Assembly: GCF_006345805.1 (NCBI RefSeq)
Contig: NW_021836982.1
Coordinates: 1 to 22,259, forward strand
DNA from: Octopus sinensis
Lineage: Eukaryota
Direction of reading: 5' to 3'
DNA: 22,259 bases
Part shown: in pieces, positions 11,328 to 21,166 of the stretch
Layout: the number at the start of each line of letters is the position of its first letter
How positions within the stretch are numbered: position 1 is the stretch's first letter
Notes under the pieces: generated by a model
Told to the model about the DNA's origin: nothing
Seen by the model: the letters and a program-made list of their open reading frames with translations, nothing else
Database searches by the model: none
Program-made: the position numbers and the translations under genes

Positions 11328-11595
11328 TTGAAAGTGGGAAATACGAATGTTGTGGTCAATGAAGAGAGAAGACGTGATACCAATAGTAATTGGTTCACTT
11401 GGAAGTATCAGTAGTCAACTACCAACATGGCTGATAAATATCGGTGCAAGTGTAAAGGTAGAAGACCTACCAAAATCAGAATTGCTTGGAACTGCAAGAG
11501 TTCTCTGCATTCTTCATGAATCATGACCAGTAAACAAGAGTCACCCAGCAAAATAGGCTTTGAGTTTTCATATAATAATAATAATAATAATAATA

Positions 11596-12451: not shown

Positions 12452-12768
12452 CTACAAAAATGTTTTGCGGGGGGCATATACAGTGAAGAGGAAACGATAC
12501 GTTGTTATTATAATTACATTGATTTTAGAGGATGTAGAATATTTTATGTGCAATTTCTGCTATTAATCCTAGTTCGCAGTTGCTAGATTTTTCATACAAC
12601 TATAGCTAGCTTTGCTATCATTACTAATGAATAGTTTATGAAAAGGATTATGTTACGTTTCAAGTAATTATTCTCCGTATTCAGCGCAAATGTTATCAAG
12701 TTACTTAGTAAAACATTCCTTCCGTATTTCAGTATAGGAAGTGATGTTCACGCACGCACACATACACA

Positions 12769-12971
12769 CGGGCGAAATGCGTAGCTGTATTTCGTCTGTC
12801 GTTACGTTATGAGTTCAAATTCCGCCGAGGTCGACTTTGCTTTTCATCCTTTCGGGGTCGAGGAATTAAGTACCAGTTACGCACTGGGGGGTCGATGTAA
12901 TCGACTTAATCCCTTTGTCTGTCCTTGTTTGTCCACTCTGTGTGTAGCCCCTTGTGGGTAGTAAAGAAATA
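12769..12971 (+). mobile_element. SINE family A, well-preserved copy (5' head truncated)
   Basis: CGAAATGCGTAGCTGTATTTCG hairpin, B-box-like GAGTTCAAATTCC, core TTTCATCCTTTCGGGGTCGA…TAAGTACCAG (resembling, by inference, the Meta-type SINE core) and tail GGGTAGTAAAGAAATA. Confidence 0.92.
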
Positions 12972-13017
12972 TACATATAGTTTGTGTGTGTGTGCGTGCG
13001 TATTAGACAGAGACAGA

Positions 13018-13503: not shown

Positions 13504-13555
<52 letters not shown>
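13460..13555. repeat. (TG)n and (AT)n microsatellites
   Basis: Direct reading. Confidence 0.9.
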
Positions 13556-13556
<1 letters not shown>

Positions 13557-13566
<10 letters not shown>

Positions 13567-13705
13567 CTATCGCCATACTAATATGGCATTCTTATAAAAA
13601 TAAGAAAAAAGCTGTCCGCTTATTAGCTCATGGAGCTAATAAGCGGACAGCTTTTTTCTTATTTTTATAAGAATGCCATATTAGTATGGCGATAACTATT
13701 ATTTT
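13557..13705. repeat. 149-bp near-perfect inverted repeat (long hairpin or cruciform; possible foldback MITE)
   Basis: Arms 13557-13629 and 13633-13705 checked base by base: 72/73 complementary, single mismatch C13567/A13695, loop ATG (13630-13632). Confidence 0.97.
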
Positions 13706-14035
13706 CCGGGAACGCTGCCGCTGTTCTCTTTTAGAGAGACTTAGTTATTTTAATATTTCTATTATATATATATATACATATACGTGCATGCAAATAGAGT
13801 TTCTGATTTGTGTAATATTTTTTATTTAGTTCCAGCTCCCTATTTATTCTTTTATTCTTTTTTCAACGAACAAGTCTTGGGTACTTTTAAACAGTGAGTC
13901 TCCATTGAACATGGCATGAACTGAATGAACACACACGCAAGAAAAATATATTTTAAAAAGCATTATTTTAACACGGTGTTTCACATGTTACTAAATATAT
14001 TTTTGTAAGTCCGAAACGCCAATTAGCGTTCCTTT

Positions 14036-15633: not shown

Positions 15634-15742
15634 ATAAATTAAGTACCAGTTATGCACTGGGGTCAATGTAATCGATTTAATCCCTTTGTCTGTCCTTGTT
15701 TGTCCCCTCTATGTTTAGCACCTTGTGGGTAATAAAGAAATA
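15634..15742 (+). mobile_element. SINE family A 3' half
   Basis: ATAAATTAAGTACCAGTTATGCACTGGGGTCAATGTAATCGATTTAATCCCTTTGTCTGTCC…GGGTAATAAAGAAATA matches 12860-12971. Confidence 0.9.
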
Positions 15743-16041
15743 TATATATATAAGAAGCAACGTTTCTCCCAAATATTATATTAAAGCCATGACTCCATTC
15801 AAAATTCTTTTGAGATATTTTTTGTCTTTTTGTTTGTTGTTGTTGATTTCCCTATTCTCTTATGGGTCTTTTTTATCCTGAGTTTGAACTCCTAAGTCTT
15901 ATCTTCTGACTGAAATTCTAACAACGGCGCTTCATTGTCGCGTTTTGTATTAAGCAACAAACGAACATGGGAATCGGCGTATTTAAAATTGCTCTATATC
16001 TGTGTATCGATTTTCGGCTTGTATATTTGCTATTAATTAAC

Positions 16042-16405: not shown

Positions 16406-16449
16406 ATTTGGTCTAAGATCCACACCTGGGCACCATTTTTGTACGCACA

Positions 16450-16930
16450 AACATACATAGATACATGCATGTATATCTACCTACCTACTTACATACATAC
16501 GTACATACATACATACATACACATACATACATACATACACATACATACATACATGCATACATACATACATACATGCATGCATGCATGTATACCTACCTAC
16601 CTACTTACATACATATATACATACATACATTAAAACATACATACATGCATGTATACCTACCTACCTACCTACTTGCATACATACGTAAATACATGTATGC
16701 ATGTATACCTACATACATACATATACATACATACATACATGCATACATACATGCATGTATACCTACCTACCTACCTACTTGCATACATACGTAAATACAT
16801 GTATGCATGTATACCTACATACATACATATATACATACACACACACATACATACATACATACATACACGCATGCATGCATACATACATGCATGCATACAT
16901 ACATACATGCATGTATATCTACCTACCTAC

Positions 16931-16961
<31 letters not shown>

Positions 16962-17185
16962 CATGCATGCATACATATACATACATACATACATACATAC
17001 ATGCATACATATATATACATACATACACATACATACATACATACATGCATGCATACATACATACATGCATGTATATCTACCTACCTACTTACATACATAC
17101 ATGCATACATACATACATACATACATACATACATGCATGCATACATATATATACATACATACATGCATACATACATACATGCGTA
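16450..17185. repeat. (TACA)n/(CCTA)n tetranucleotide satellite with higher-order units
   Basis: Direct reading; GCATGTATA(T/C)CTACCTACCTAC recurs six times. Explains the YIHT/MHTY ORFs. Confidence 0.95.
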
Positions 17186-17980: not shown

Positions 17981-18340
17981 GTATATTTATTTATATATGT
18001 GTATATTATATATGAGCGAATAGATAGATGATAGATAGGAAGTATGTATGTATGTATGTACGTATGTAGGTAGGTAGGTAGGTAGGTAGGTATATATGTA
18101 TGTAGGTAGATAGGTAGGTAGGTAGGTAGGTAGGTAGGTAGGTATGTAGGTAGGTAGGTAGGTATATATGTATGTAGGTAGATAGGTAGGTAGGTAGGTA
18201 GGTATGTAGGTAGGTAGGTAGGTAAGTAGGTAAGTAGGTAGGTAGGTAGGTAGGTAGGTATGTAGGTAGGTAGGTAGGTAGGTAGGTAGGTAGGTAGGTA
18301 GGTATGTAGGTAGGTAGGTAGGTAGGTAGGTAGGTAGGTA
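17570..18340. repeat. Degenerate (TG)n/(CA)n/(CT)n/(AT)n block followed by (TAGG)n/(TATG)n satellite (18042-18340)
   Basis: Direct reading. Confidence 0.9.
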
Positions 18341-19084
18341 GCTACTTACGGATAATTAGCTATATAGATGTGTGTATGTGCATGTAATAATATATTGTGA
18401 TGAAATGTGTATTACGCACAACCAAATATCTACCATTAACAACTTCCTGCGTATTCTTGTATATTCAAATGGAAACTATGAGGAAGACGTCTATTTGGGG
18501 TCCTATTTCCCTTTCGTTAGGATCTAAGACTTTATGAACAATTTCCTGTTTTGCTCCATTTCCGATATATAGTGTAAATATGGGTGCATATGTGTGTGAG
18601 AGCGAAAGAGAGTGTATGTGTATGTGTGTGTATGTGTGTCCGTTCATGTAACCTTAGTATAATAAAGAGAATTAACAGAGAATTCAAAGAATTTTCTAAT
18701 TTTTATATTCGAGTTTAGAAAAACAAGGAATACAAACAGCCTAAGGAAAATATGTCAGGTTATACAGAGAAATAATAGGCACACATATTCCATAAACTTA
18801 TAATCGGCGGTAAAAACGATTTGTTTCTTGTAAAAACAAAGAAAAAAACGAAAAAATTGTGCACCCGTAAATATGTCAAAACTTTATCAGCTTAGAATGG
18901 TAATTAAACACAACGTTATTGAATTGAATATTAAACGGTTATTATAAGCATTGGAGTGAGATTAAAACTAAATATTAGAATTTTAGGTTTTGTGTTGCTT
19001 ACCGAGTCCGCACGAAATAGCGAACAACTCGGTTATGGTTGTTGCATGCAATAATTATAGCAGAAGATATTGGTATTCGTGACC

Positions 19085-21048: not shown

Positions 21049-21166
21049 GCACTCCATCGGTTACGACGATGAAGGTTCCAGTTGATCCAATCAACGTACC
21101 ACGCAGTGGGACCGAACCCGGACCCATGTGGCAGGGAAGGAAGCTTCTTACCTCACAGCCACGCCT
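21049..21166 (-). mobile_element. Chimeric short SINE: family C tRNA head fused to family B 3' end
   Basis: The reverse complement of 21097-21166 matches 19668-19739. The reverse complement of 21049-21096 matches 9626-9678. Confidence 0.85.

What the first reader, a model, noticed from the sequence alone, without database searches (positions are those of the whole stretch)
13557..13705. 149-bp near-perfect palindrome: 73-bp arms, one mismatch, 3-nt loop
Seen: 72/73 bp complementarity, with 62 uninterrupted pairs next to the loop. The centre CTC-ATG-GAG is one base short of a zero-loop palindrome (CTCCATGGAG). The sequence is complex, not simple repeat, encodes nothing, and is far better matched than any transposon in the window. 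Established: such structures extrude cruciforms, are unstable, and as RNA are Dicer and ADAR substrates; foldback MITEs are a known source of new miRNA and siRNA loci, and coleoids have expanded miRNA repertoires. Inference: a very recent foldback insertion, arms homogenised by gene conversion, or a selected hairpin-RNA locus.
Basis: partly seen in the sequence, partly recalled or inferred. Interest (0 to 1): 0.75.

Follow-up and report, generated by a model that had tools for sequence, protein, structure and literature searches.

The report
Young 149-bp DNA palindrome in octopus
A real, almost perfect 149-base DNA palindrome sits next to a TA microsatellite in repeat-rich, apparently non-coding octopus DNA; it is most likely a young inverted duplication made in one step by a replication or repair error, and nothing here shows that it is a transposon copy or a working small-RNA gene.

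Summary
The arms are 13557-13629 and 13633-13705, 72/73 complementary, with a 62-bp perfect stem next to a 3-nt loop (ATG). One C/T transition separates the arms (13567 vs 13695). Chance expectation is about 6e-29, and the next-best complex hairpin in the window has a 12-bp stem.

Complementarity stops abruptly at both ends. There is no target-site duplication. The left end abuts (TA)27. No other copy of the arm exists in the 22 kb.

SINE copies matching a motif I recalled as the abundant Octopus SINE suggest an octopod genome. This rests on memory and was not confirmed by any database or paper.

Rfam reports mir-965 just above threshold on both strands. This is best read as a structure-driven false positive: the seed differs at nt 7, similarity is 16/22, the stem is perfect, and all retrieved miR-965 reports are from arthropods.

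Best reading (about 0.5): a roughly 2-My-old (0.05-11 My) local inverted duplication made by template switching or fold-back synthesis beside a structure-prone microsatellite. Rivals are a foldback MITE copy, an older repeat made perfect by arm homogenisation, an assembly artefact, and a selected hairpin-RNA gene.

Genome-wide copy number, outgroup state and expression could not be tested, because no octopus genome or small-RNA data are reachable with these tools. Interest is modest.

The parts
13557..13629 (.). Left arm of the palindrome (73 nt)
   Evidence: reverse complement of 13633-13705 at 72 of 73 positions
13630..13632 (.). Central 3-nt spacer ATG, the smallest loop a fold-back can have
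13633..13705 (.). Right arm of the palindrome (73 nt)
13567..13567 (.). The only arm-to-arm difference (C here; partner 13695 is A). It is a transition, not at a CpG. It gives a C-A mismatch in a + strand transcript and a G-U pair in a - strand transcript.
13504..13556 (.). (TA)27 microsatellite directly abutting the left arm; itself self-complementary and structure-prone
13706..13762 (.). Unique right flank (CCGGGAACGCTGCC...), not complementary to the left flank and with no direct repeat of it, so no target-site duplication
13572..13587 (.). Small hairpin nested in the left arm, GCCATA-CTAA-TATGGC (mirrored in the right arm)
13589..13606 (.). Small hairpin nested in the left arm, TTCTTAT-AAAA-ATAAGAA (mirrored in the right arm)
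13596..13666 (.). Stretch that Rfam's mir-965 model (RF02520) matches on both strands at 44.6 and 44.5 bits (gathering score 43); judged a structure-driven false positive

Best explanation
The palindrome is a young, locus-specific inverted duplication. About 73 bp of local AT-rich sequence beside a (TA)27 microsatellite was copied in reverse complement right next to itself in a single event. The likely route is a nascent DNA strand that folded back on itself, or jumped to the opposite strand, at a stalled fork or resected break, copied back along the same stretch, and then rejoined the original template (template-switch mutation or fold-back synthesis). This creates a perfect hairpin-forming sequence at once, with a minimal loop, sharp ends and no target-site duplication. 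One transition has accumulated since, which puts the event at roughly 2 My (0.05-11 My) at the octopus repeat-clock rate. Shown: the structure, its sharp boundaries, the lack of a target-site duplication, the microsatellite next to it, and the absence of other copies in 22 kb. Inferred: the mechanism, which arm is the copy, and the age. As DNA it should be able to extrude a cruciform and be prone to breakage or deletion. If the region is transcribed, it would give a 73-bp double-stranded RNA, a plausible ADAR or Dicer substrate. Nothing here shows that it is transcribed or used.
For: The arms are 72/73 complementary with a 62-bp perfect stem and a 3-nt spacer. Complementarity falls to 8 of 29 just outside the arms, so the event had discrete end points. 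No direct repeat flanks it: the left flank is TATATA, the right flank is CCGGGA. The left boundary coincides exactly with (TA)27. The arm's 29.5% G+C is like the surrounding window's 25-44%. Each arm is already hairpin-prone on its own, z about -4.1 to -4.4, p about 0.001, which suits a region where strands fold back. No second copy of the arm was found in the window at up to 3 mismatches or by short-word BLAST. Template switching is documented to create perfect base pairing for a whole hairpin in one event, including at loci with no earlier similarity (PMC10710096), and to homogenise and extend inverted repeats (abstracts of PMC13100816 and PMC8604942). The age comes from 1/73 differences and the calibration JC 0.09 = 25 My in Octopus vulgaris (PMC13282606; arithmetic).
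Against: The decisive evidence is missing: an outgroup or allele with only one arm. Genome-wide copy number is unknown, so a transposon family is not excluded. No clear microhomology at the switch points can be read from the sequence. A single assembly cannot exclude an artefact.
Confidence: 0.5

Rival explanations
1. It is one copy of a foldback-type miniature inverted-repeat transposable element (MITE): a non-autonomous DNA transposon whose consensus is itself a near-perfect palindrome, inserted recently by a transposase supplied in trans.
For: Size (149 bp), AT-richness and full-length hairpin potential suit MITEs. DNA transposons including Tc1-Mariner, hAT, piggyBac and MITEs are reported as recently active in Octopus vulgaris (PMC13282606). 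The element sits at a TA-rich site, the preferred target of Tc1/mariner-type elements (my knowledge). Genome-wide copy number could not be examined.
Against: No target-site duplication of any length: the left flank ends ...TATATA and the right flank begins CCGGGA. The outermost arm bases AAAA...TTTT cannot be an absorbed palindromic duplication such as TA or TTAA. There is no second copy or half-copy in 22 kb. There is no non-palindromic core, which most MITEs have (my knowledge). The 'MITE' class in the O. vulgaris annotation has 65 families with 65 insertions, that is, singletons. So single-locus inverted repeats of this size may be getting labelled as MITEs without evidence of mobility (my inference).
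Confidence: 0.22
2. It is an older, imperfect inverted repeat whose arms were recently made identical by arm-to-arm gene conversion or quasi-palindrome correction, so the near-identity reflects homogenisation rather than youth.
For: Template switching between imperfect inverted-repeat arms is known to homogenise and expand them (abstracts of PMC8604942 and PMC13100816; PMC10710096). The smaller hairpins nested in each arm could be traces of earlier rounds.
Against: No decayed complementarity remains outside the arms (8 of 29 matches, about random). Any homogenising event must therefore have covered the whole repeat. Seventy-three bp is short for classical gene conversion (my knowledge).
Confidence: 0.1
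3. It is an assembly or library artefact: a fold-back chimera or a de Bruijn-graph hairpin at the edge of a hard-to-assemble (TA)n tract. The real genome has only one arm.
For: Palindromes and (TA)n tracts are hard to sequence and assemble (abstract of PMC4057610). The structure sits exactly at a microsatellite edge. Only one assembly is available.
Against: Read-level fold-back chimeras stay complementary out to the read ends. Here both flanks are different, ordinary sequence. The arms differ at one base, whereas a duplicated read would be identical unless the difference is a heterozygous site.
Confidence: 0.08
4. It is a functional hairpin-RNA gene under selection: a microRNA (Rfam suggests mir-965) or a hairpin-RNA/endo-siRNA locus.
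For: Rfam mir-965 (RF02520) scores 44.6 and 44.5 bits on the two strands against a gathering score of 43. The 3' arm reads UAAGCGGACAGCUUUUUUCUUA against miR-965-3p uaagcguauagcuuuuccccuu (PMC12484754). Coleoids gained many new miRNA families (PMC9699675). New miRNAs can start as template-switch hairpins (PMC10710096).
Against: The seed (nt 2-8) differs at nt 7, AAGCGGA against AAGCGUA, and overall identity is 16/22. A random 22-mer reaches 16/22 or better somewhere in this palindrome with P = 5e-4. With the few thousand mature sequences behind Rfam's miRNA families (number from memory), one or two such matches are expected by chance. Perfect hairpins inflate covariance-model scores: mir-3660 scores 50.9 bits with little sequence identity, and bacterial and plastid hairpin families also match. 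The mir-965 model's 16-nt apical loop is aligned to bases that are paired here. All retrieved miR-965 reports are from arthropods, and the host appears to be an octopod. A 73-bp perfect stem with a 3-nt loop is not a canonical Drosha substrate (my knowledge). There is no evidence of transcription or conservation.
Confidence: 0.05

Closest known systems
Template-switch mutations (TSMs) that create perfect hairpins in one event (Loytynoja and Goldman model; Monttinen et al. 2023, PMC10710096)
   Same: A reverse-complement copy lies right next to its source, with perfect pairing at birth, a tiny loop, sharp end points, no target-site duplication and a single locus. It is a possible raw material for new miRNA genes.
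   Different: The ancestral state is not available here, so the event is inferred and not reconstructed.
Foldback elements and palindromic MITEs
   Same: Short, AT-rich, non-coding, and able to fold over its whole length.
   Different: No target-site duplication, no internal non-palindromic core, and no second copy seen. Family membership is untested genome-wide.
Human palindromic AT-rich repeats (PATRR11, PATRR22, PATRR17 and others)
   Same: Single-locus, near-perfect palindromes with no or minimal spacer and no homology to one another. They are AT-rich, form cruciforms and are breakage-prone (PMC7999016).
   Different: PATRRs are several hundred bp and more than 90% AT. This one is 149 bp and 70.5% AT.
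mir-965 microRNA precursor family (Rfam RF02520)
   Same: Hairpin with UAAGCG...AGCUUUU in the 3' arm, scoring just above the family's gathering threshold.
   Different: Seed mismatch at nt 7, 16/22 identity, a perfect 73-bp stem, a 3-nt loop in place of about 16 nt, equal score on both strands, and a non-arthropod host.
Hairpin-RNA (hpRNA) endo-siRNA loci of Drosophila
   Same: A long, nearly perfect inverted repeat that as RNA would be a Dicer substrate.
   Different: hpRNA stems are usually hundreds of bp and are defined by siRNA reads and target genes (my knowledge). Neither is known here.

Membership tests
MITE / foldback DNA transposon | Terminal inverted repeats | tested here: met
   Trivially met: the whole 149 bp is an inverted repeat.
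MITE / foldback DNA transposon | Target-site duplication flanking the element | tested here: not met
   The left flank ends ...TATATA and the right flank starts CCGGGAAC. There is no direct repeat of 2-10 bp. The outer arm bases AAAA/TTTT are not a palindromic duplication.
MITE / foldback DNA transposon | Multiple dispersed copies in the genome | not testable with these tools
   No other copy in the 22-kb window. There are 0 hits in JGI metagenomes and IMG/VR, but the SINE motif also has 0 hits in IMG/VR, so that collection holds no DNA of this genome. The fetched ENA contigs lack the SINE motif and so probably come from a different species from the window.
Template-switch / fold-back inverted duplication | Reverse-complement copy lying directly next to its source with a short spacer | tested here: met
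   73-nt arms, 3-nt spacer.
Template-switch / fold-back inverted duplication | Sharp end points, no target-site duplication, flanks otherwise unrelated | tested here: met
   8 of 29 complementary positions beyond the arms, about random.
Template-switch / fold-back inverted duplication | Ancestral or outgroup sequence carries only one arm (four-point solution) | not testable with these tools
   No orthologous octopus sequence is reachable. Exact-ORF look-ups for the flanks are not on record.
mir-965 (Rfam RF02520) | Covariance-model score at or above the gathering score | tested here: met
   44.6 and 44.5 bits against 43 on the + and - strands. The margin is small and the score is boosted by perfect pairing: mir-3660 scores 50.9 bits with little sequence identity.
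mir-965 (Rfam RF02520) | Identical seed (nt 2-8) of the mature miRNA | tested here: not met
   AAGCGGA here against AAGCGUA in miR-965-3p (PMC12484754); 16/22 overall.
mir-965 (Rfam RF02520) | Precursor shape: imperfect stem with a sizeable apical loop | tested here: not met
   73-bp stem with one mismatch and a 3-nt loop. The model's 16-nt loop aligns to paired bases.
mir-965 (Rfam RF02520) | Taxonomic range (arthropods) | tested here: inconclusive
   All retrieved reports of miR-965 are from insects and crustaceans. The window carries copies of a SINE that I recalled as octopus-specific. The host assignment rests on that memory-based lead and was not confirmed in the literature.
mir-965 / any miRNA or hpRNA gene | Expression and precise processing into 20-24-nt RNAs | not testable with these tools
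   No small-RNA data are available. The supplements held for PMC9699675 contain no miRNA sequences: the let-7 positive control failed.
PATRR-type palindromic AT-rich repeat | Near-perfect palindrome with little or no spacer, unique sequence | tested here: met
   Uniqueness was tested only within the window.
PATRR-type palindromic AT-rich repeat | Several hundred bp, more than 90% AT | tested here: not met
   149 bp and 70.5% AT, against the definition in PMC7999016.

The most novel reading that the evidence does not exclude
The locus is a newborn hairpin-RNA gene caught near its birth. A single template-switch event beside a microsatellite made a perfect 73-bp hairpin in a transcribed (for example intronic) region of an octopus genome, and it is already processed into small RNAs or hyper-edited by ADAR. 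That would be a live example of how the coleoid small-RNA repertoire grows.
Probability: 0.07. Interest if true: 0.6.

Novelty: new member of a known kind. Interest (0 to 1): 0.3.

Why it matters
Near-perfect palindromes of this length are thought to be short-lived, so each one marks a recent mutation and a likely fragile site. If an outgroup confirms a one-step origin by template switching, this would be a clean invertebrate example of the mechanism proposed to seed new microRNA genes. It would come from a lineage known for gaining many new microRNAs and for heavy RNA editing. If the arm turns out to belong to a repeat family, the finding is an ordinary MITE. There is also a practical point: a perfect genomic hairpin can pass an Rfam miRNA gathering threshold (mir-965 here) on both strands without being a family member. 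Such hits need a seed check and a taxonomy check.

Tried and rejected
1. Other copies. Pattern searches of two arm segments with up to 3 mismatches, and short-word BLAST in the window, found only the two arms.

The control with the abundant SINE motif also gave 0 hits in IMG/VR, so that negative says nothing. No control was possible for the JGI collection.

3. Protein-space trick. The palindrome-encoded peptide of the spurious ORF was searched against 5.8 billion clusters, to catch any gene-called copy in other assemblies. 

4. Exact look-ups of the two flanking ORFs, to find the same locus in other assemblies, were not on record.

5. More DNA from the host was sought through relatives of the LINE tail ORF. 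The long ENA contigs (L003-L006) lack the SINE motif and match the window only at about 70% over that ORF, so they come from other animals. They hold no arm copy.

6. The literature was searched for the arm or the putative mature RNA. Only unrelated primers turned up. The octopus miRNA paper's held supplements contain no sequences, because the let-7 control failed.

7. tRNA or mitochondrial tRNA origin of the cloverleaf-like arm. Standard ARAGORN finds none. Its permissive -mt mode calls a 'His(atg)' centred on the big hairpin's loop and an adjacent 'Asn(att)', both on AT-rich hairpin sequence, so I rejected them as false positives.

8. A larger element enclosing the palindrome. Self-BLAST of the window shows only SINE copies at 6500-7024, 12760-12979 and 15634-15750. 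Nothing pairs the flanks of the palindrome.

9. Coding context. Pfam found nothing significant in nearby ORF fragments, and the only hit on the ORF through the palindrome was below threshold.

Full report
**The observation**

The structure is exactly as described. The arms are 13557-13629 and 13633-13705, 73 nt each and 99% complementary, separated by ATG. The single mismatch is C at 13567 against A at 13695, a C/T transition between the arms. The uninterrupted stem next to the loop is 62 bp.

Folded as DNA it gives -82.2 kcal/mol (z = -23). The minus strand folded as RNA gives -120 kcal/mol (z = -19), and there the mismatch becomes a G-U pair. With this base composition about 6e-29 such stems are expected in the window. 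The next-best non-periodic hairpin has a 12-bp stem.

The sequence is complex and 29.5% G+C. An 81-aa ORF crosses it, but it is mostly translated (TA)n. The palindrome-encoded part has no relative in 5.8 billion protein clusters, and its only Pfam hit is below threshold.

**Surroundings and host**

The window is about 32% G+C overall (25-44% per kb). Tandem repeats cover 26.5% of it. It has no tRNA and no convincing exon.

It carries fragments of mobile elements. One is a LINE-type reverse-transcriptase tail at 8434-8754(-), whose relatives occur only as stray animal contigs in metagenome assemblies. There are also several copies of a SINE at 6500-7024, 12760-12979 and 15634-15750.

A 22-mer that I recalled from memory as part of the abundant Octopus SINE matches exactly at 12814-12835 and with one mismatch at 6935-6956. 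The full copy reads as I remember that element. The basis is my memory plus the match, because the literature search for the motif found nothing.

**Anatomy that bears on origin**

- Complementarity ends abruptly: 8 of 29 positions beyond the arms pair, which is random.
- There is no target-site duplication. The left flank is the end of (TA)27 (13504-13556) and the right flank is CCGGGAACGC. The outermost arm bases, AAAA/TTTT, cannot be a hidden palindromic duplication such as TA or TTAA.
- The left boundary coincides exactly with the microsatellite, which is itself a hairpin-forming tract.
- The spacer is 3 nt, the smallest possible fold-back loop. The centre is one indel away from either of two zero-loop palindromes.
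- Each arm is hairpin-rich on its own. It contains GCCATA-CTAA-TATGGC, TTCTTAT-AAAA-ATAAGAA and a closing stem AGCTA/TAGCT. The z-score is -4.4 with DNA parameters and -4.1 with RNA parameters, p about 0.001 over 5000 shuffles. Only about 1% of other 73-nt windows in the same DNA reach z of -3.5 or lower.
- No other copy of the arm exists in the 22 kb, and nothing pairs the wider flanks.

**The Rfam hit**

Rfam reports mir-965 (RF02520) at 13596-13666 on both strands, 44.6 and 44.5 bits against a gathering score of 43. I do not accept this as membership, for these reasons:

- The alignment places the model's 16-nt apical loop on paired bases.
- The same stretch scores 50.9 bits against mir-3660 with almost no sequence identity, and it also matches plastid and bacterial hairpin families. 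Perfect pairing is therefore supplying much of the score.
- The candidate mature RNA is UAAGCGGACAGCUUUUUUCUUA. It matches miR-965-3p (uaagcguauagcuuuuccccuu; PMC12484754) at 16 of 22 positions and differs in the seed at nt 7.
- A random 22-mer does as well somewhere in this palindrome with P = 5e-4. Given a few thousand mature sequences behind Rfam's miRNA families (a number from memory), one or two such matches are expected by chance.
- Every retrieved report of miR-965 is from an arthropod, while the host appears to be an octopod.

**Most likely mechanism**

The features listed above are a reverse-complement copy directly beside its source, a minimal loop, sharp ends, no target-site duplication, local base composition and a structure-prone microsatellite at the boundary. 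Together they fit a one-step inverted duplication by template switching or fold-back synthesis.

This mechanism is documented to create perfect pairing for an entire hairpin in one event, even where no repeat existed before (PMC10710096). It is also documented to homogenise and extend inverted repeats (abstracts of PMC13100816 and PMC8604942).

One difference in 73 sites, with the O. vulgaris repeat clock (JC 0.09 = 25 My; PMC13282606), gives about 1.9 My. The Poisson range is 0.05-10.6 My. The mechanism, the direction of copying and the age are inferences. I put this reading at about 0.5.

**Rivals**

- *Foldback MITE (about 0.22).* It fits in size and composition but fails the target-site-duplication test. 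Copy number is untested. In the O. vulgaris annotation the 'MITE' class has 65 families with 65 insertions. Single-locus inverted repeats of this size may therefore be getting labelled as MITEs without evidence of mobility (my inference).
- *An older repeat homogenised by conversion (about 0.1).*
- *Assembly artefact (about 0.08).* The differing flanks and the single arm difference argue against it, but only raw reads can settle it.
- *A selected hairpin-RNA gene (about 0.05).* It has no positive evidence. A 73-bp perfect stem looks like new DNA, not like a processed precursor.

**What could not be done**

No octopus genome, orthologous locus, raw reads or small-RNA data are reachable with these tools.

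- Scans of JGI metagenomes and IMG/VR were negative. The SINE control was also negative in IMG/VR, so that negative carries no weight.
- The protein-space search and the exact-ORF look-ups found nothing.
- The ENA contigs fetched through the LINE tail lack the SINE motif and so come from other animals; they hold no arm copy.
- Supplements of the octopus miRNA paper held here contain no sequences.

**Verdict**

This is a real and statistically extreme feature. It is best explained as a young local inverted duplication of a known kind. The miRNA label from Rfam is a false positive. Interest is modest (0.3). It would rise if the locus proves single-copy, absent from sister species, and expressed.

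Noticed in passing
window 13557-13629 (mirrored in 13633-13705): Each arm is significantly self-structured on its own: three small hairpins inside a 5-bp closing stem, a cloverleaf-like shape. z is about -4.1 to -4.4 and p about 0.001. It is not a tRNA by ARAGORN. This may mark a region that has undergone earlier small fold-back events; it remains unexplained.
   Followed up: partly
window 13596-13666, both strands: A perfect genomic hairpin passes the Rfam gathering score of mir-965 on both strands and scores even higher (below threshold) against mir-3660. This is a warning about miRNA calls on palindromes.
   Followed up: yes
window 6500-7024, 12760-12979, 15634-15750: Several copies (77-91% alike) of a SINE containing TTCAAATTCCGCCGAGGTCGAC, which I recalled from memory as the abundant Octopus SINE. 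This suggests an octopod genome, but the attribution was not confirmed.
   Followed up: partly
window 8434-8754 (-): ORF resembling the C-terminal tail of a LINE reverse transcriptase. It is 90% identical to a protein on ENA metagenome contig ERZ27289496:k119_834504 and 60-70% identical to many others, which look like animal DNA in metagenome assemblies. There is no Pfam match.
   Followed up: partly
window 7351-7560 (+) and 11332-11523 (+): Short open frames that look to me like the C-terminal end of a mariner-type transposase and the tail of a retroelement polyprotein. This is from memory only; Pfam finds nothing.
   Followed up: partly
whole window; for example 16447-17180 (ACAT)n, 18042-18341 (GTAG)n, 5077-5472 (TTC)n: 26.5% of the window is microsatellite or short tandem repeat, including a 734-bp (ACAT)n array and many (TA)n tracts.
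   Followed up: no
window 9627-9678 and 21049-21096: A second short dispersed repeat (79% identical, inverted orientation) in G+C-richer stretches, possibly another SINE or tRNA-derived element.
   Followed up: no
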